Origin: Botryllus schlosseri
Lineage: Eukaryota
Direction of reading: 5' to 3'
Length of the DNA stretch: 64,000 nucleotides
NCBI GenBank assembly: GCA_051294905.1
Contig: CM119382.1
Location: forward strand, 7,564,001 to 7,628,000
Both the position numbers and the translations under genes were made by a program. This document shows positions 7,119 to 60,900 of the stretch, piece by piece. Position 1 is the first letter of the stretch. Every line of letters begins with the position of its first letter. The notes beneath the pieces are model-generated. The model had not been told where the DNA came from. It did not search any database and saw only the letters and a list, made by a program, of their open reading frames with translations.

Positions 7119-7393
7119 GTGGTGAAATGGCATGGTCATTGGTATAATCCACAGCTGCAACACCAATGGGTTGTTGGTTCGAGTCCGGCTGAGGACGACA
7201 CGAGAATTCCTACCCAAGTGTTGGAGGTTTATCTAGGCTCGTCGTCATCCTGTGATCCGCGTAAGCGGTGATTTATAAAAGCCTAGGAGTGGGCTGTGCT
7301 AAAAGTCGGTGAATACGGAATCAAAAAATGAATATAGGCATACTCTAAAACTACGAAATTAGTCAAAACACCATGAATAAAAAACAAACAAAC
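7119..7393 (+). mobile_element. SINE family A copy
   Basis: Same head (ggttcgagtcc), body (gtgttggaggtttat..ttataaaagcctag) and aaacaccatgaata..caaac tail. Confidence 0.87.
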
Positions 7394-12040: not shown

Positions 12041-12314
12041 TTGTTTGTGGTATTCATGGTGTTTGTCGAATACTATGGTCGTTTACATCAGACCGATTTT
12101 CTTCATTTTTATTCCGTATAGCTGTCGATTTCTAGCACACAACCTACTTCTCGGCTTTTTATAAGGCACCGCTTGCGCAGATGAGATCGCGAGGAGGAGC
12201 CTAAATAAACCTCCAACACTTGGGTAGGAATTCTGGAGTCGACCTCGGTCGGACTCGAACCCGCAACACATTGGTGTTGCCGCTGTGGATGATACCACTA
12301 CGCTGTCTCGCCAC
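12041..12314 (-). mobile_element. SINE family A copy
   Basis: Reverse complement begins gtggcgagacagcgtagtggtatc..gggttcgagtccgaccgaggtcgac. Confidence 0.88.
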
Positions 12315-12924
12315 AAGTTCTCCTGCGACTCCGCGAAGTGAAGTGTGCTCCCAGAAATATCGACGGTGATAGCACCTAGAATCCAAATTGACCGACACCT
12401 GTTCACCGAAACCGTAGATATTGATATGACTGCGCGGTTCCGAAATGACGGCAATGAATAGTTCCGCCCTTGAAATCTGAGCTCCCCGGTATGAATGCGA
12501 CCTAAAGAGGAAAGCACATCATCCCGTAAAGAAATACGAATTTGAAATCTTTCAAGTAGCCTAGCGACAATCTTCATTGGAGGTCACGAAATAACAACAT
12601 GCTTCCACAAAGTAATGCGGAGCCACCCGAAACTTCATTAAGAGTCTTAAGTGTGTGGCATTGTGTCCTAAATTTTTGAACACATCATTTCCACCAGCTC
12701 CAGGATGAATTCTGATCACGTGTATGCTATGTATGGAAGTACCAATATCATCGACCAAATTTATACATAAACTCGAAAAGAAATTCGCGCGCCCAGTGAA
12801 TTTATACATACTTATTTTCACAGCAGTTAAAGTAGCTATTGGTGCATGGTATAAGCCGACAAACATAAACGGATAAGTTCGCCGATACCTAACACGGCCA
12901 CATCTACGAATCGGGTGACACCGG

Positions 12925-13062
12925 NNNNNNNNNNNNNNNNNNNNNNNNNNNNNNNNNNNNNNNNNNNNNNNNNNNNNNNNNNNNNNNNNNNNNNNNNNNN
13001 NNNNNNNNNNNNNNNNNNNNNNNNNNNNNNNNNNNNNNNNNNNNNNNNNNNNNNNNNNNNNN
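12925..13062. other. Assembly gap (138 N)
   Basis: Run of n. Confidence 1.
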
Positions 13063-13654: not shown

Positions 13655-13790
13655 AAAAGAGTAATGAAAAGATTCATATTGAACTGAACCTGAATATTTC
13701 CGACTGAACCTCGTCAGGTATAATCGTCAGCAACTAGTAGAGAATTGAAAAGAACATTGTATATTAAATATCGTACCACAATGTCATCTG
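13655..13790 (-). mobile_element. PLE 3'-end copy with degenerate hammerhead
   Basis: Reverse complement: ttcaattctctactagttgctgacgattatacctgacgaggttcagtcggaaatattcaggttc. Confidence 0.85.
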
Positions 13791-13825
13791 TTCGTCTTAA
13801 TTAAAATAATTTTCATTCCGCTGAT

Positions 13826-13920
13826 GTGATATTTTGTGATACGAATGTTGATACACCATATTATTTTCAATTCTCTACTAGTTGCTGGCGATTACCGTTG
13901 ACGATTGTTAACGTGTTGAG
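13826..13920 (+). mobile_element. PLE 3'-end copy truncated at a hAT insertion
   Basis: ttttgtgatacg..ttctctactagttgctggcgattaccgttgacga matches 60280-60351. Confidence 0.8.
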
Positions 13921-14901
13921 CAGTGTTGGGATCAAGTCACTACCTTCGAGTCACGAGTCATCTCGAGTCATTGCACATTTTGACTCGAGTCAAGTCAAGT
14001 CAATCGATTTTCAAAGGTGACTCGAGTCAAGTCAAGTCACTCGTTTTTTGTAAGTGACTTGAGTCAAGTCACGAGTCAAGTCATGATTCAAGTCAAATTG
14101 AATTTTCGAAGTATGAGTGATGAATCAAAATCATTACATTTTGCTAACTGGGTGAAGGACAGATTAATTGGACATTTATCTTGAATCAAATAACAAATAT
14201 AAAGTTAAATGTACATGCAAAAAGGTGTTGTATCGCACACGCATACGCAGAACTGCTAATAAAATAATGAGTGTACAGCTACATGCTACGGTCTGTTATA
14301 CAACCAGTCAATATAGAGGATCGAATACGAAGCATCGAGAAGTTGAACAAATTGATGTGGTACAATACAACCACCCATCTACACGTCAGTGAGAATATAA
14401 ACGAATAAACTATATTTGTTCGATTTAAATCATATTGGTAAAGGTGAGTATACTGCGCAATGTAAGCAGCAAGCCCTGAGCCGTCTTAGAAACAAAGATA
14501 CGTTGCTATTAGATTAATCCACTGCTACTAAGACAACGTAAGCTGTGGTCGTTTCGTTTGCGTTCAATTTATTTATGATGTAACAATGCAGGATCAGTGA
14601 AACGTACAATCAGTGAATACTGGTTGCTCTCACAAGTGACACATGCGTATCGCGATCTGCGAACGACCTGAACAGTGAATATACATAAGACAGCGTGATT
14701 TAATCGACTCTTTTTACTTAATGACTTGAAATTGACTCGTAAATTTTGCTCCGAGTCACGAGTCAATCCGCATTTCTGAAGCGCCGAGTCAAGTCAAGTC
14801 AAGTCATTTTCGCAAAGTGACTCGAGTCAAGTCAAGTCATACGAAAAAGGTGACTCGAGTCTGACTCGAGTCAAGTCATGACTCGAGTCATCCCAACACT
14901 G
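13921..14901. mobile_element. Non-autonomous hAT element with GAGTCA/AGTCA subterminal arrays
   Basis: TIR CAGTGTTGGGAT..ATCCCAACACTG; 8-bp TSD GTGTTGAG / GTGTTGAC. Confidence 0.9.
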
Positions 14902-17807: not shown

Positions 17808-18055
17808 TTTTGTTTATTCGTGGTATATTGATGGTGTTTGTCGACTACAATAGCCATTTATAGCGACAGCCGACTTGTAGCCGGGCCCACTGCTAAACTT
17901 TTTAAGACACCGTTTGCGCGGATGAGATGGCGAGGAGTAGCCTTGATAAACCTCCAACACTTAGGTATGAATTTTGGAGTCGATCTCGGTCGGACTCGAA
18001 CACACCATCCATTGGTGTTGTTGTTGTGGATTATACCACTACGGCGCTTCCCACC
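17808..18055 (-). mobile_element. SINE family A copy with 11-bp TSD
   Basis: Full head/body/tail; TGGGGTTAGGG at 17797-807 and 18056-66. Confidence 0.88.
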
Positions 18056-20262: not shown

Positions 20263-20548
20263 GTAAGTGGCGAGATAGCGTAGTGGTATAATCAGCGGCT
20301 GCAACACCAATGGGTGCGGGTTCGAGTCCGACGGAGGTCGACTTCCGAATTCCGAGACCTAAATGTTGGAGGTTTACCTAGGCTCCTCCTGGCCACCTCA
20401 ACCGCATCAGCGGTGTCTTACAAAAGCCTAGAGGTGGGTCGTGCTATAAGTCGGCAGTTACGGAAAATAAGAAGAATATCGGCATGATGTAAATGACCAT
20501 AGTAGTCGACAAACACCATGATTACCCCAAAACAAAAACAAAAACAAA
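20263..20548 (+). mobile_element. tRNA-derived SINE family A, full length
   Basis: A box TAGCGTAGTGG 20276-86, B box GGTTCGAGTCC 20319-29, (CAAAAA)n tail, 12-bp TSD AAAATGATGACC (20251-62 / 20549-60). Confidence 0.9.
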
Positions 20549-20785: not shown

Positions 20786-21218
20786 GAGTAGTATATTCAT
20801 ATTGGAATGAACCCGAATATTCTCGGCTGACACTCATCAGGGGTAATCGTCAGCAACTAGTAGAGAATTGGAAAGAACATTGTATATCAACAATCGTATC
20901 ACAAAATATGACGTCATTAGCATGAAATTTCGAATAAGGGATCGTTCAATGTACTCATTATGTTGACACAGCCTTGGCTGGGGCATTTTGATAAAAGTCG
21001 GCTCCAAGACACAGAAATGAAAGTGTGAACGGCCCCCTCTGACGACCCAAAATCTGTCGTCTCGATAATTTTTAGAACAAGCGGAATTATCCAACAGATG
21101 CTTGCTTATGGCCTTAAAATGCTCCCTATCAAGCTTGAGGGGATGAGTCCAGGGTGAGCTTTTCACCGAGCGAGATACGCGAGTTCTAATAAATCTAGGG
21201 ATATGCTGATTTATGCTG
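20786..21218 (-). mobile_element. PLE 3' fragment (decayed GIY-YIG C-terminus + hammerhead at 20811-20854)
   Basis: Reverse complement aligns with 59950-60398: KHLLDN..NYRDDRF..LEPTFI; GCTGACGATTACCCCTGATGAGTGTCAGCCGAGAATATTCGGGT. Confidence 0.88.
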
Positions 21219-22695: not shown

Positions 22696-55871
<33,176 letters not shown>

Positions 55872-58800
55872 GTAAAGAAAAACCGGTCGCTGTCATCGTA
55901 GCTACCCGCGACGCCATTTATCGGTTTCGAAAATAAGCAAATCCATCACTGTCCTTGAGTGATACACTCCGCACTTGCGATGTTACTATATACATAGTAC
56001 ATACTGATCGAATCGAACGATCATAACTTGTGTGATGTACCGCGCCATTTATATCACGGTCGTATGCATCCGCTGTGAACATTGCTCAATCATTCCCGTG
56101 TCGATTCCAATGTCGTTCTAGGTAAAAACATCGCAGGATATTTCGACGGTGGATAATTGTCGCCAATGAATATTTGCTTTCATCCACTCTTTTCGCAATG
56201 TGGTTATAACAAGGAAATGTAACCCAATACGCCACTTTCCGACCGCGTGATGCGCCAATTTATTTTGCTTTATACGCTGGCTGTGCCATCATATATTTAT
56301 ACCCAATGAGTGTCCATACCCGCTTAAGTCATCTCTTTTATACGCTACATGCTGCCAGTATATCGTTACGATTTTCACACTAACATTTTAAGCTATGTGT
56401 TGTAAACGAATCGCTTGTTATGTCCACCGAACTGAATGCACCATTCGTGTAGGTGTAGGCCCAAACCTACACGAGACCATCAAACATAACTGATATGTCA
56501 TCAGTGACTATACACATACAGTATACACGTTGTTTGCATCCACGCTTACGTTAGTAGAAGGCCGGTTATGTATTACTTATTAAGTTTACCGGTATTATCT
56601 GAAGTATACGAGTTTTCATGACCTACCTATACGTTTATGAATTCGAATATCTGATGGCGAGTGCCTTCCCGCATCAGAACACCATATACGCGTGCAACTG
56701 TACATTGTACATATGCTTGTAAAGTCATACTGTGTAATTGAGCAAGGCTTGTGATATGACGTTTTTCTTCAATCTAGTAGACATCACCGTATTAGACCCA
56801 GCGCCTATGCGCACGGCCCTACCCGAGTCCGAGCTATTTCTGCCGCTCGTACTTTCTATCAGTGCAGGCTTTCGTTACATGCGTTGAACCTGGCTTACGT
56901 ATTTCTGATCACAATAATCTTTTGTTCCATGATGTGTGGGCTGGTTCACATCTACATAGTAACCAAAAAGAGCACCGCTACCGGTGAAAATTGTACCCTG
57001 CCACGAATGTCAAAAGCCACAATGTTTACCATGTTAATTTGTTCGTAGGGAGCATGATTCATCGCTTGGTAATCTAGTGCTTTTTACATTCGAATGCTGC
57101 GAACCAAATCACTTCGGAATGGTCCTTGCGGTCGACTACTCTACGGCGGCATTTAGGGGTCGCCATAGCACAAATCTCCATAAAAGGCTCAATGTCTCCA
57201 GACAATTTCAACCAGTACATCGGTCACCACGCCCGGCTTGTTAAAAAATGTCTGAAACGCGATCATGATCAATATGTTCCGTGCGGTAGGTTATACAATG
57301 TAGCCCAACCTTTATCTTCATGTTATCATTGTGTGCATGTTGCTGTATTATATTCTTCATCGTTTATGACCTCGCCACCGGCTCTTCTTCATATTTTCGC
57401 TTTCGCGAGTTTACATTTTCTCGAATTAACGCGTCCCCACACGCATATCTAACCTCGTAGAATGATACCGTGTTTTTTGTCAAGCAAGATTTTTTTCTCT
57501 TCAATAAAAACCATTATCTCTTCACAAGAGACGTCACTCAGACTTGAAAGAGAAAGCTTAGAACAATATAGATTCTATCACAGATTCACAGTATAGGTAC
57601 CCTTTGTAAAAATAGTCATGTAATACTATCATAATTAAACACTGGTGAACGCAATAGGAAGGGCGAGCAAATGGTAAATGACTGTCTGGGGGCAGAGAGA
57701 GATATAGATAGCCTGACAACGGGCACATGAGGCCAAAGTTTGTATTTGGTAAAGCAGGGTTGTAGCAGGTCATTGGTTTTGTCAAGTCCGGTATGCCTTA
57801 TCAAAAAAAACTTCTGATATACTAAACAGATTCATAAAAACACGGGCGTATCAAATGGGGTTCAGCCAGGGATATCTAGAAACTATATATCCCTGGGTTC
57901 AGCGCTATCGGTATGTTGGGCAAAGTAAATAGACCACGCACTGTATACGGAAATCGGGTATTTCAGCGATTTCTACAATCGGATAGGGTGCAAATCGGGT
58001 AAACGTCACCTTCTGGTCTAAAATTAATTTCCAAACCATTCAAACGGGTGTAAACGAGTCAAATACATTGATTCCTACGGATATATATCCCAATGGTGGA
58101 GTAGGTTATGTCCTCGTGTACCGTGTACCCCTCCCCCAAGAGAACACCTAAAAAGCCGAACAATACAACCCTGGGATATATCTCCATATGGAGTGTGTAT
58201 ATCTTTCGTTTTCACCCATTGCAATGGGCGTGAAAGCCAAATCTTGTACCAGAGGGTGCTGGGGGATCGGTTCGCAGACTACGATATGGTGGAAATCTGG
58301 TAAATGCACCATTTTTCGACCGTTATAATTACAGTGCGCGCGTGCCGCATTTACTACTTCGTCCCGAAAGCAGGCAATGAAATTTTCACTAAACAGTGCG
58401 AGCGACACAACAAAGGTTTCGATATCATAGCGCTATCATTATCAAGAACATCGCCAGTATTTATCTGCAGTATTTATCTAAAAATATGTTTGTATATGTC
58501 AAAACCTGCGAACCTCGCCATGGCGAATTTTGAAGGCAGGGATGATATGTTTTAAACAATGATGTGACGAAATGAAAATCCATTCTGATTGAAAACGAAT
58601 GATGTCGTAATGCCGGAGTCGAAGACACGCAGGGAGCATTCGTGCATTTCGCCCGCTGTTCGCTCCACCACTGATAACAATCGACCATCAACATTTTTGA
58701 TTTTTGCGAGTAGCCTGATCGGAGCCTGATTCGTACTTTTTCCGTACGACCGGAACGCGTGGGATTTAGACAGAGCCGGGTTGACATTGGTAGGAGTTTT

Positions 58801-59295: not shown

Positions 59296-59572
59296 CTGCA
59301 GATATGTAATACGATATACTTGAAGGGTGTGGTAGTTTACTCTTGCGAGAACATACAATGGATCCTGTTATATTTGAGGTCGTAATTTGAATGGCTCGAG
59401 GGTTCCAATACTAATTTAAAAATGAATTTTAATGATTCGAATCGAGGGGTGAGATAATATTTATCCGCGTACTGAAACTATATGGTCTTGCCTGTAAATA
59501 TATATTATGGGCAAGGATTTCAGTTTAGATACTTTCCTCCATCCGTGGAAGACGTGGAATCTAGATCTGACT

Positions 59573-60398
59573 TTAGAACTTGACTACATCCGAAAAATCT
59601 TACTGGATAACGGTTACCCTGAACACGTCATCAGCCGTGGCATGGAGAGGAAATTAACGCAATTCAACGCAGAAAAACGAACAGAGCCCACCGCACGAAC
59701 AATAAAGGATGTTTATATCCATCTACCTTGGATTGGCCCCATTTCCACCCGCTTTGAAAAACAATTGATTTCTGCTGTCAGTAAGTGTTACGACACAGTC
59801 AAAACCAATGTGATTTATACAACAACACAACTGCTCCCTTCAACACGCAAAGACATGCTTCCTGCACTTCAACAAAGTAATGTAGTGTACGAATATAGGT
59901 GCCACTGTGATTGTGGCTACGTGGGAAGAACGTCAAGACGTCTGCAGGACCGCATAAACCAACATGTCCCAAGATTTATCAGAACACGCTCAGTGAAAAG
60001 CTAACCCTTAACTCATCCACTTAAGATTGATGCTGATCGATCAAAGGCCATTAATTCTGCCATCGGCAAACATCTGTTGGATAATCCGATTTGTGCGAAT
60101 AATTATCGAGACGACCGATTTCGAATCGTCGGGCGAGGCCGCTCACAATTCCATTTGTGTGCCTTGGAATCAACTTTTATCAAAATACACCAACCAAAAC
60201 TCTGTCAACAAAAGGAGTTCGTGTACCACCTAAAAATAGTACATTGAACGCTCTCTCTTTCATGCCGGTGACGTCATATTTTGTGATACGATTGTTGATA
60301 TACAATATTCTTTCCAATTCTCTACTAGTTGCTGACGATTACACCTGACGAGTGTCAGCCGAAAATATTCGGGTTCATTTCAATATGAATAAACTATT
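59573..60398 (+). mobile_element. 5'-truncated Penelope-like retroelement (post-RT region + GIY-YIG endonuclease + 3' UTR with hammerhead)
   Basis: ELDYIRKILLDNGYP; NVVYEYRCHCDCGYVGRTSRRLQDRINQH (GIY-YIG with PLE CCHH spacing); reads in frame through one TAA (60002-4) to SAIGKHL..LESTFI..LCQQKE..* at 60247. Confidence 0.9.
60331..60376 (+). ncRNA. Minimal type I hammerhead ribozyme in the PLE 3' end
   Basis: CTGACGA 60345-51; 1-bp stem II G60352/C60360; GAAA 60361-64; palindromic stem III AATATT 60364-69; predicted cleavage after C60370; stem I ACAC/GGGT with one mismatch (ACCC in the 20.8-kb copy). Confidence 0.75.
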
Positions 60399-60900
60399 TA
60401 ATTGATTTTAAGTAGCACAGCATCTAAAATATGTATCACAAAGCTGCGTGCACGAATGCAAACGGGATTTCTGCACGAAGTAGCGATCAACCCGAAACAC
60501 CCTCAGAAAGCGCAGGTCGAAATACCAGTATCAAATTATGCTTGATATGGTGAGTATTGCAACTAGGGCTGCATTTGTAACAAAAATCAATTTAAAACAA
60601 ACATGTTGAAAACATTGCCCTTGTTTAAAACATGTTTTTATTGTGCTTTTTCTAGCCAAGACGTCATGAATATTTAATTGGCATTAGACATTGGCATTGA
60701 CAATAGAAAATATAGGGTAAAAATGGCTCCTTTGACGAAAAGGGCTTCCCACCACTGTCATAAACAGACCATAACTATATTTAACCAGGACTAAATCGTT
60801 ACGCAGCATTTTTGCGGTCGGCGGTCATCATCATCAGAACATCAATTCCGTACAGATTATTATCAATATCTACTTGCTATAACTGTCGAACCATATAGAC

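What the first reader, a model, noticed from the sequence alone, without database searches (positions are those of the whole stretch)
60331..60376. PLE hammerhead with a duplicated catalytic core and an anti-core loop: candidate self-regulating ribozyme switch
Seen: GCTGACG-ATT-ACAC-CTGACGA-G-TGTCAGC-C-GAAA-ATATT-C^GGGT. The core CTGACGA (60345-51) has an exact upstream twin (60332-38). Loop II TGTCAGC (60353-59) can pair with the true core as a 5-bp hairpin CTGAC-GAGT-GTCAG, which would sequester the catalytic nucleotides (OFF). It can instead pair with upstream GCTGACG as a 7-bp helix, which frees the core and makes a pseudoknot across stem I and loop II (ON). Established: Penelope-like elements carry minimal type I hammerheads with short palindromic stem III that can cleave as dimers; AATATT fits this. 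Inference: the decoy core plus anti-core loop sets cleavage timing during transcription or dimerisation. I do not recognise this architecture as described but cannot check the literature.
Basis: partly seen in the sequence, partly recalled or inferred. Interest (0 to 1): 0.85.

Follow-up and report, generated by a model that had tools for sequence, protein, structure and literature searches.

The report
Penelope retrotransposon hammerhead with pseudoknot helix
This is the small self-cleaving "hammerhead" RNA motif in the tail of a dead Penelope-like retrotransposon copy; its second helix is built by pairing with a box just upstream, which is a known type of hammerhead fold, and comparative data do not support a purpose-built on/off switch.

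Summary
It is one of eight decayed copies in the window of a dispersed repeat. That repeat is the 3' tail of a 5'-truncated Penelope-like element (PLE), about 100 nt after a GIY-YIG endonuclease ORF relic.

The motif is a minimal type I hammerhead: 4-bp stem I, full core, G10.1-C11.1, and a 1-bp stem III with a palindromic loop.

The proposed "ON" pairing of upstream GCUGAC with loop II GUCAGC is real. It covaries across at least four related PLE families from other assemblies: 6/6 pairs show double changes and 92% of cells pair, against 69% in shuffles. It is the ribozyme's helix II, built as a pseudoknot. This strand order is known from the PK hammerhead (PDB 8YDC, PMC11300833), but here there is no helix IV.

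The "duplicated core" is specific to this family. The core-masking "OFF" hairpin shows no covariation and is absent in two families, though it is unusually stable in four.

RNA reads show no cleavage pile-up, and Rfam finds nothing.

Earlier follow-ups in this scan reached the same pseudoknot reading on other DNA of this genome.

Verdict: a new variant of a known kind. The switch idea is unproven.

The parts
59498..60244 (+). Relic of the C-terminal part of a Penelope-like element ORF (HTH_animal plus GIY-YIG endonuclease). One in-frame stop lies at 60002-60004. No reverse-transcriptase part remains in the window.
   Evidence: translation. (weak GIY-YIG match; the homologue P0003 passes the Pfam cut-off). 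(homologues carry PF26215). (P0001 aligns at 96% over 59567-60244; no RT match).
60258..60404 (+). Conserved 3' tail of the element, shared by all copies of the family; it contains the hammerhead.
   Evidence: In one search, read depth rises at about 60253 and falls to zero after 60405.
60331..60336 (+). Upstream box GCUGAC, the 5' strand of the pseudoknotted helix II. G60337 may add a G.U pair with U60353.
   Evidence: columns 6-11 with 31-36: all 6 pairs show changes on both sides, 93.8% paired..
60337..60340 (+). Linker GAUU between the box and stem I. It is GAUU or GAUA in most families.
   Evidence: alignment. In one search the linker is 4 nt in most candidates.
60341..60344 (+). Stem I 5' strand, ACAC. 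A60343 is a private mutation; the family has C there.
   Evidence: (60343 A>C in about 90% of reads). (helix 2 covaries).
60345..60351 (+). Hammerhead core C3-A9 (CUGACGA).
   Evidence: (core nearly invariant across families).
60352..60360 (+). G10.1 (60352), a spacer U (60353), GUCAGC (60354-59, the 3' strand of the pseudoknotted helix II) and C11.1 (60360).
   Evidence: G10.1-C11.1 is G-C in 27 of 27 rows; the pseudoknot pairs covary.
60361..60370 (+). G12 A13 A14, then stem III A15.1-U16.1 closing the loop AUAU (palindrome AAUAUU, able to pair in a dimer), then C17. Predicted cleavage is after 60370.
   Evidence: (AAUAUU in family A, AAGCUU in the other families; both are palindromes). Cleavage itself is not shown.
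60371..60374 (+). Stem I 3' strand, GGGU.
20809..20858 (-). Second copy of the motif. Stem I is intact (ACCC) and position 7 is U, but GAAA has become GAGA.
   Evidence: (63.9 bits).
20948..21214 (-). Endonuclease ORF relic belonging to the second copy.
13686..13735 (-). Decayed copy of the motif. With the copy at 13880-13933 it forms an adjacent inverted pair.
   Evidence: inverted repeat I12..
13880..13933 (+). Strongly decayed copy; it diverges after the core.
   Evidence: (11.3 bits, E 0.43).
44892..44939 (+). Decayed copy (core CUAACGA; 2-nt deletion in GAAA).
50214..50262 (+). Decayed copy (box GCUGGC, loop GUCGGC, GAAA lost).
52003..52052 (-). Divergent, decayed copy.
54494..54543 (-). 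Decayed copy. The core is destroyed (CGAACGA), yet the box/loop pair C-G is changed to U-A on both sides.

Best explanation
The stretch is the hammerhead ribozyme motif in the 3' tail of a 5'-truncated, dead Penelope-like retrotransposon copy.

It is a minimal type I hammerhead with these parts:
- a 4-bp stem I;
- the full conserved core;
- a G10.1-C11.1 pair;
- a 1-bp stem III whose loop makes the palindrome AAUAUU. Such a stem III is known to form a stable helix only when two copies pair as a dimer.

Its helix II is not a hairpin. The six nucleotides between G10.1 and C11.1 pair with a box four nucleotides upstream of stem I, which makes a pseudoknot. The strand order is box, stem I 5', core, helix II 3', GAAA, stem III, cleavage site, stem I 3'. 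This is the order of the crystallised 'PK hammerhead'.

The short linker probably ties the far ends of helices I and II together, and so replaces the loop-loop contact of canonical hammerheads (inference).

The resemblance of the box to the core is a side effect. In this family the helix II 3' strand happens to be complementary to the core, so its partner strand looks like the core.

This particular copy has a stem I mismatch at A60343. No copy in the window keeps every required feature. Cleavage itself is inferred, not shown.
For: Element identity:
- A GIY-YIG/HTH_animal ORF relic ends about 100 nt upstream.
- Related loci show RT, HTH_animal/GIY-YIG, then the motif, often with an inverted truncated copy upstream. 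This matches the published PLE layout (PMC8557442).
- Copies share a 3' end but have ragged 5' ends.

Hammerhead features:
- Core, G10.1-C11.1 and A15.1-U16.1 are nearly invariant across families. Stem I covaries (ACCC, GCCA, GCAA, UCCC, CCCA, UACU). Stem III keeps a palindrome (AAUAUU or AAGCUU).

Pseudoknot helix II:
- All six pairs show changes on both sides; 93.8% of cells pair.
- For the whole structure, 92% of cells pair against 69% in shuffles and 25-43% when the partners are slid.
- Candidates were picked without any reference to the box. Of 15 distinct ones, 11 have at least 5/6 complementarity at a linker of 4-6 nt, against 10.7% for shuffled loops.

Structural precedent: in PDB 8YDC the chain passes from G10.1 straight into a 6-bp pseudoknot that replaces helix II (PMC11300833). 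A hammerhead with a 1-bp stem II plus a 6-bp pseudoknot has been validated by compensatory mutants (PMC3088659).
Against: - No Rfam hammerhead model matches, even at E<=10.
- RNA reads show no pile-up of ends at 60370/60371, and many reads and contigs bridge the site. Efficient cleavage in vivo is therefore not seen.
- Every copy in the window is mutated somewhere.
- The rows of alignment A2 that came from fetched loci were chosen from the box-complementarity screen. That biases. The unbiased evidence is.
- The number of independent families is small (about 5-7).
- The nested minimum-energy fold of this copy is not unusual (z = -0.47).
Confidence: 0.75

Rival explanations
1. The loop II strand toggles between masking the catalytic core (OFF hairpin CUGAC-GAGU-GUCAG) and pairing with the upstream box (ON). 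This toggle is a selected device that times cleavage during transcription or dimerisation.
For: - In family A the nested three-hairpin OFF fold (-10.9 kcal/mol) is about as stable as a rough sum for the ON fold (-7.4 for the pseudoknot helix and -2.4 for stem I, each evaluated alone).
- The local core-masking hairpin is at least as stable as the observed one in only 0.56% (family A), 0.42% (D), 1.7% (B) and 3.3% (E) of all 4096 possible loop hexamers.
- Families A and B reach a 5-bp hairpin with a 4-nt loop in different registers.
Against: - The OFF pairs are kept no better than in shuffled columns (69.6% against 69.7%; 307 of 500 shuffles do as well) and show no excess of double changes.
- Families C and G cannot form the hairpin (0.0 and -0.4 kcal/mol).
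- Families A, D, E and F share the helix sequence by descent, so they are not independent.
- The changes that do occur in loop II are compensated in the box, not in the core.
- The resemblance could be left over from an origin by local duplication.
Confidence: 0.15
2. The box/loop II helix forms between two molecules or two tandem units, as a domain-swapped dimer, rather than within one unit. The motif would then be active only as a dimer held together by both stem III and helix II.
For: Stem III is a 6-nt palindrome in all families. PLE minimal hammerheads are reported to act as dimers (PMC4209133, PMC6765202). Covariation cannot tell pairing in cis from pairing in trans.
Against: The 4-nt linker is short and conserved, and the strand order is the same as in the monomeric PK hammerhead crystal structure. 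Both fit pairing in cis. No direct data exist.
Confidence: 0.1
3. The motif no longer acts, or never acted, as a ribozyme in this lineage. The conserved helix and flanks would serve another role in the PLE tail, for example recognition by the element's reverse transcriptase, and the hammerhead likeness would be vestigial.
For: No cleavage signature appears in RNA reads. There is no Rfam match. PLE hammerheads have low reported activity in vitro, and their function is considered unclear (PMC4209133, PMC8557442).
Against: The eleven core nucleotides, G10.1-C11.1, A15.1-U16.1 and an H at position 17 are kept across families whose proteins are only 45-53% identical, while the stems covary. One family carries C3 to U together with G8 to A, two positions that pair in the active fold. 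That pattern is hard to explain without selection on the catalytic fold.
Confidence: 0.07

Closest known systems
Pseudoknot-containing (PK) hammerhead ribozyme (Weinberg et al. 2015 as cited in PMC11300833; crystal structure PDB 8YDC, Zhan et al. 2024)
   Same: The 5'-to-3' strand order is the same: pseudoknot 5' strand, linker, helix I 5', CUGANGA, G10.1, pseudoknot 3' strand, C11.1, GAAA, helix III, cleavage site, helix I 3'. A 6-bp pseudoknot takes the place of helix II. The G10.1-C11.1 pair is kept.
   Different: - Here the 5' strand is a plain single-stranded box, not the loop of a helix IV hairpin.
- The linker is GAUU (4 nt), not an A-rich 6-nt linker that forms a minor-groove triplex.
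- Seven rather than six nucleotides lie between G10.1 and C11.1.
- Stem III is 1 bp with a palindromic loop (dimer type).
- The host is a eukaryotic retrotransposon.
Minimal hammerheads of Penelope-like elements (Cervera & de la Pena 2014, PMC4209133; Lunse et al. 2017, which I could not read)
   Same: It lies in the PLE tail downstream of the RT-endonuclease ORF. It is type I with a 4-5-bp helix I, a helix II of about 7 bp, and a minimal palindromic helix III implying action as a dimer.
   Different: Published descriptors require helix II to be a hairpin directly after A9. Here only G10.1-C11.1 is local and the rest of helix II comes from an upstream strand, so those descriptors and the Rfam models miss it.
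[quoted passage not shown] 2011, PMC3088659)
   Same: A 1-bp local stem II is supported by a 6-bp pseudoknot that is essential for activity; this was shown with compensatory mutants.
   Different: That one is a type II permutation from a metagenome, and its pseudoknot joins loop I to a 3' tail. This one is type I, and its pseudoknot is formed by loop II itself with a 5' box.
Non-circularly permuted hammerheads, types SGC, CSG and GCS (Eckert et al. 2023, PMC10085705)
   Same: The core helices cross as pseudoknots, and a linker of about 3 nt joins the far ends of stems I and II.
   Different: Those rearrange three intact blocks. Here the block order is the classical type I order (C, G, S), and only the stem II strand of block C has moved upstream. 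That paper assumed this does not occur.

Membership tests
Hammerhead ribozyme | Conserved core: CUGANGA, GAAA, and an H (not G) at position 17 before the cleavage site | tested here: met
   CUGACGA at 60345-51, GAAA at 60361-64, C at 60370. The core is nearly invariant across families.
Hammerhead ribozyme | Three helices around the core, with G10.1-C11.1 and A15.1-U16.1 closing pairs, supported by covariation | tested here: met
   stem I has 4/4 pairs with changes on both sides; helix II (pseudoknot) has 6/6; G10.1-C11.1 is G-C in 27/27 rows; A15.1-U16.1 is A-U in 26/27. In this copy stem I has an A.G mismatch at 60343.
Hammerhead ribozyme | Match to a curated Rfam hammerhead covariance model | tested here: not met
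   no hammerhead family reported at gathering score or at E<=10. This is expected if helix II is not a local hairpin.
Hammerhead ribozyme | Site-specific self-cleavage | tested here: inconclusive
   no place where at least a fifth of the molecules begin or end, and reads and contigs bridge 60370/60371. Reads come from many copies in both orientations. Cleavage below about 20% of depth would not be listed, and standard libraries are not selective for 5'-OH ends.
Penelope-like-element minimal hammerhead | Located in the tail or pLTR of a PLE, downstream of the RT/GIY-YIG ORF | tested here: met
   (window). (related loci with RVT_1, then HTH_animal/GIY-YIG, then the motif).
Penelope-like-element minimal hammerhead | Helix III of 1-2 bp with a short palindromic loop (dimer type); short helix I | tested here: met
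   AAUAUU or AAGCUU; helix I is 4 bp.
Penelope-like-element minimal hammerhead | Helix II is a 6-8-bp hairpin directly following A9 | tested here: not met
   only G10.1-C11.1 can pair locally around a 7-nt loop. The helix is made with the upstream box.
PK hammerhead (8YDC type) | Helix II replaced by a pseudoknot of about 6 bp between the loop II strand and a strand 5' of helix I | tested here: met
   The strand order was compared with the crystallised sequence quoted.
PK hammerhead (8YDC type) | The pseudoknot 5' strand is presented in the loop of a hairpin (helix IV), and an A-rich linker docks in that hairpin's minor groove | tested here: not met
   the flanking pairs are only 60% paired, and the two middle pairs are unpaired in 16-17 rows. 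The linker is GAUU or GAUA.
Non-circularly permuted hammerhead (SGC/CSG/GCS) | Blocks C, G and S occur in a non-classical order | tested here: not met
   the order is CUGANGA, GAAA, cleavage site, which is the classical type I order (definitions).
Bistable (self-regulating) ribozyme switch | The alternative, mutually exclusive pairing is conserved and covaries | tested here: not met
   69.6% paired against 69.7% in shuffles. The hairpin is absent in families C and G.
Bistable (self-regulating) ribozyme switch | The two folds have comparable stability | tested here: inconclusive
   OFF fold -10.9 kcal/mol; ON fold estimated only by adding helix energies, because no pseudoknot energy model was available. 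Comparable in family A, not in families C and G.

The most novel reading that the evidence does not exclude
A whole clade of Penelope-like elements uses a stripped-down pseudoknot hammerhead with no helix IV, which current descriptors and Rfam miss. In several families the helix II 3' strand is also selected to mask the catalytic core. The ribozyme would then be bistable and cut only when dimerisation or co-transcriptional folding releases the core. This could also account for PLE lineages reported to have a 'core only' hammerhead or none (PMC8557442).
Probability: 0.15. Interest if true: 0.75.

Novelty: new variant of a known kind. Interest (0 to 1): 0.45.

Why it matters
Hammerheads in Penelope-like elements are well known, and so are hammerheads whose helix II is a pseudoknot. 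I did not find the two together in the papers I could search. One key paper on PLE hammerheads (Lunse et al. 2017) was not readable, so prior description cannot be ruled out.

If the reading holds:
- Hairpin-based descriptors and Rfam models under-count hammerheads in animal genomes.
- The natural minimum for a PK hammerhead is smaller than the crystallised form, because it needs no helix IV.
- Four nucleotides can replace the loop-loop tertiary contact.

The switch idea would be the more interesting part, but comparative data do not support it at present.

Tried and rejected
- **Rfam.** Searches at gathering score and at E<=10 found no hammerhead match.
- **Helix IV.** I tested for a hairpin around the box, as in PDB 8YDC. 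It is not conserved.
- **OFF hairpin.** The covariation test gave no signal.
- **Nested folding of this copy.** Unremarkable, z = -0.47.
- **tRNA scan of the window.** No genes found.
- **Viral-contig pattern scan.** One hit, A/T-rich and with no box; judged a chance match.
- **Metagenome scan.** It returned mostly one near-identical family (E), so it added few independent events.
- **Second alignment.** A MAFFT alignment of one sequence per family (A3) aligned the boxes by sequence rather than by structural register. I did not use it for pair counts.
- **Unreadable sources.** Lunse et al. 2017 and Weinberg et al. 2015 are not held. The supplements of PMC8557442 that list 'HHR_core' elements are not held either.
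- **Left out of alignment A2.** The copy at 13880-13933, because it diverges after the core.
- **Reverse strand.** It has no hammerhead core; this is from reading by eye, not from a separate test.

Full report
**Observation.**

- GCTGACG at 60331-37
- ATT at 60338-40
- ACAC at 60341-44
- CTGACGA at 60345-51
- G at 60352
- TGTCAGC at 60353-59
- C at 60360
- GAAA at 60361-64
- ATATT at 60365-69
- C at 60370
- GGGT at 60371-74

The upstream CTGACGA at 60332-38 is an exact twin of the core. The pattern CTGANGA..CGAAA occurs four times in the window against 0.82 expected. No Rfam family matches, either at gathering score over the whole window or at E<=10 around the site.

**What the stretch belongs to.**

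The motif lies in a repeat of about 150 nt that has eight copies in the window, on both strands. The copies share a 3' end near 60404 and have ragged 5' ends, as expected of a 5'-truncating retroelement.

Directly upstream, 59498-60244 is one reading frame with a single in-frame stop at 60002-60004.
- It carries the GIY-YIG signature. The Pfam match is weak here but above cut-off in the homologue P0003.
- Ten homologues at 45-96% identity carry the Pfam HTH_animal domain.
- In their contigs they follow an RVT_1 ORF.
- tblastn finds a second relic at 20948-21214 on the minus strand and no reverse-transcriptase part in the window.

This is the tail of a 5'-truncated Penelope-like element (PLE). 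Hammerheads in PLE tails are an established association (PMC4209133, PMC6765202, PMC8557442). The adjacent inverted pair at 13686-13735 / 13880-13933 matches the published PLE insertion pattern. So do the inverted upstream copies in the related loci.

**Anatomy.**

In hammerhead numbering the motif reads as follows:
- Stem I is ACCC/GGGU in the family. This copy has A at 60343.
- C3-A9 is CUGACGA.
- G10.1 and C11.1 enclose seven nucleotides.
- G12 A13 A14 follow.
- A15.1-U16.1 closes the loop AUAU, giving the palindrome AAUAUU.
- C17 precedes the predicted cleavage site, after 60370.

Only one base pair of helix II can form locally.

**The pseudoknot.**

The seven enclosed nucleotides are U plus GUCAGC. 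GUCAGC is complementary to GCUGAC, which lies four nucleotides (GAUU) upstream of stem I.

I fetched the DNA around the PLE homologues and scanned metagenome contigs with a pattern that fixes neither the box nor loop II. The same layout recurs with different helix sequences:
- UGACGC/GCGUCA (families B and G)
- GACAGA/UCUGUC (family C)
- UCCGAU/GUCGGA (family D)
- UCUGAC/GUCAGA (families E and E2)
- UCUGAC/GUUGGA (family F)

Stem I also differs between families (GCCA, GCAA, UCCC, CUUC, CCCA, UACU), and stem III is AAGCUU instead of AAUAUU.

On a 27-row alignment (A2), one search gives:
- 92% of cells paired, against 69% after shuffling and 25-43% when partners are slid;
- covariation score 0.596 against 0.194 (0 of 500 shuffles reach it);
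- all six box/loop II pairs and all four stem I pairs show changes on both sides.

The A2 rows that came from fetched loci were picked from the box-complementarity screen, so one search is biased towards the helix. The fairer test uses candidates chosen only by core plus stem I. Of 15 distinct candidates, 11 show at least 5/6 complementarity at a linker of 4-6 nt and 7 show 6/6. Shuffled loops give 10.7% and 1.3%.

The number of independent families is small, about 5-7, but the signal is clear. The box is the 5' strand of helix II.

**Is that fold physically sensible, and is it known?**

Yes to both. The crystallised PK hammerhead (PDB 8YDC; PMC11300833) has the same strand order. There the chain runs from G10.1 directly into the far end of a 6-bp pseudoknot that "fulfils the same role that helix II plays". 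Perreault et al. [quoted passage not shown]

The present motif differs in several ways:
- The box is not the loop of a helix IV hairpin. Flanking pairs are only 60% paired and the middle pairs are mostly unpaired.
- The linker is GAUU or GAUA rather than an A-rich triplex-forming stretch.
- Stem III is the dimer-type minimal form of PLE hammerheads.

Published PLE hammerhead descriptions require a 6-8-bp hairpin helix II. Eckert et al. assumed that the stem strands adjoining CUGANGA cannot be separated from it. In the literature I could search, no paper links PLE hammerheads with a pseudoknotted helix II. Lunse et al. 2017 and Weinberg et al. 2015 were not readable, so prior description cannot be excluded.

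**The switch hypothesis.**

Two claims need separating.

(a) "Duplicated core / decoy". This is not conserved. The box tracks loop II, not the core, and in other families it bears little or no likeness to CUGANGA.

(b) "Anti-core loop". The evidence is mixed.
- Against: the five OFF pairs are kept in 69.6% of cells, equal to the shuffled mean of 69.7%. They show no excess of double changes. Families C and G cannot form the hairpin at all.
- For: the local hairpin energy falls within the most stable 0.56% (family A), 0.42% (D), 1.7% (B) and 3.3% (E) of all 4096 possible loop hexamers. Families A and B reach a 5-bp stem with a 4-nt loop in different registers.
- Caveat: families A, D, E and F share this helix by descent, so there are about two independent observations.

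In family A the nested minimum-energy fold consists of three hairpins that bury the box, the core and GAAA/C17 (-10.9 kcal/mol). This is similar to a rough additive estimate for the active fold. I had no pseudoknot energy model, so that comparison is an inference.

I therefore rate a selected OFF/ON device at about 0.15. A leftover from an origin by local duplication, or chance, would fit as well.

**Activity.**

I laid two raw-read RNA runs and two contig sets on 60100-60600.
- The tail (about 60253-60405) is abundant in RNA. It comes from many copies: 98% of the bulk run's reads (74% of the single-cell run's) continue into unlike flanks. In the bulk run the two read orientations are about equal.
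- No position is listed where at least a fifth of the molecules begin or end, and reads and contigs bridge 60370/60371.
- There is therefore no sign of efficient cleavage. Low-level cleavage, or cleavage only in tandem transcripts, is not excluded.
- PLE minimal hammerheads are reported to be weak even as dimers in vitro.

None of the eight window copies keeps every required feature. This copy has the stem I mismatch, and the copy at 20809-20858 has GAGA in place of GAAA.

**Evidence for selection on the catalytic fold.**

The core and the closing pairs are kept across families whose proteins are only 45-53% identical, while the helices covary. Family E2 carries C3 to U together with G8 to A in all four copies. 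From established hammerhead structural work, these two positions pair in the active fold.

**Relation to earlier notes of this scan.**

Earlier follow-ups on other parts of this genome reached the same reading: a PLE hammerhead whose helix II is a pseudoknot with an upstream box. I tested that claim independently here. I did not test their suggestion about the host organism.

**Verdict.**

- This is a new variant of a known kind, a helix-IV-less pseudoknot hammerhead of the PLE minimal type.
- This copy is a decayed relic.
- Interest is moderate.

Noticed in passing
L002:3430-3479 (+), L002:708-757 (-), L003:3517-3566 (-), L003:4430-4479 (+): A sister family (E2) has UUGACAA instead of CUGANGA in all four copies, that is C3 to U together with G8 to A. 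These two positions pair in the active hammerhead fold, so this looks like a natural compensatory change in an amplified family. Three of the four copies also have G12 to A at a CpG.
   Followed up: partly
window 13672-13781 (-) and 13811-13908 (+): Two truncated copies of the PLE tail lie back to back as an inverted repeat about 50 nt apart. This matches the inverted-copy insertion pattern described for Penelope-like elements.
   Followed up: partly
window 60404 joined to 60152 (one contig of run X1): A contig from an RNA run joins the tail end to a point 253 nt upstream. This would fit a partial tandem (pseudo-LTR) arrangement of another copy. Many copies continue past 60404 with a shared tail of about 30 nt that this copy lacks.
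   Followed up: no
window 7123-7326, 12157-12315, 17899-18043, 20267-20540, 51629-51906: Another dispersed repeat family occurs in both orientations. By eye its start resembles a tRNA (GTGGTATAAT...GGTTCGAGTCC), so it is probably a tRNA-derived SINE. ARAGORN calls no tRNA gene in the window.
   Followed up: partly
window 46428-46503, 51488-51563, 53659-53734, 58014-58089, 58195-58251: A further repeat of about 76 nt has four direct copies and one inverted copy at 61-72% identity. Its nature is unknown.
   Followed up: no
window 12925-13062: A run of 138 N (assembly gap or masked). It was left untouched.
   Followed up: no
L008-L127 (metagenome contigs): One near-identical hammerhead family (E) accounts for most of the 120 metagenome hits. 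It often lies within 100 nt of a contig end, so some host-associated metagenomes hold much DNA of an animal carrying a young, high-copy PLE or derived element of this type.
   Followed up: no
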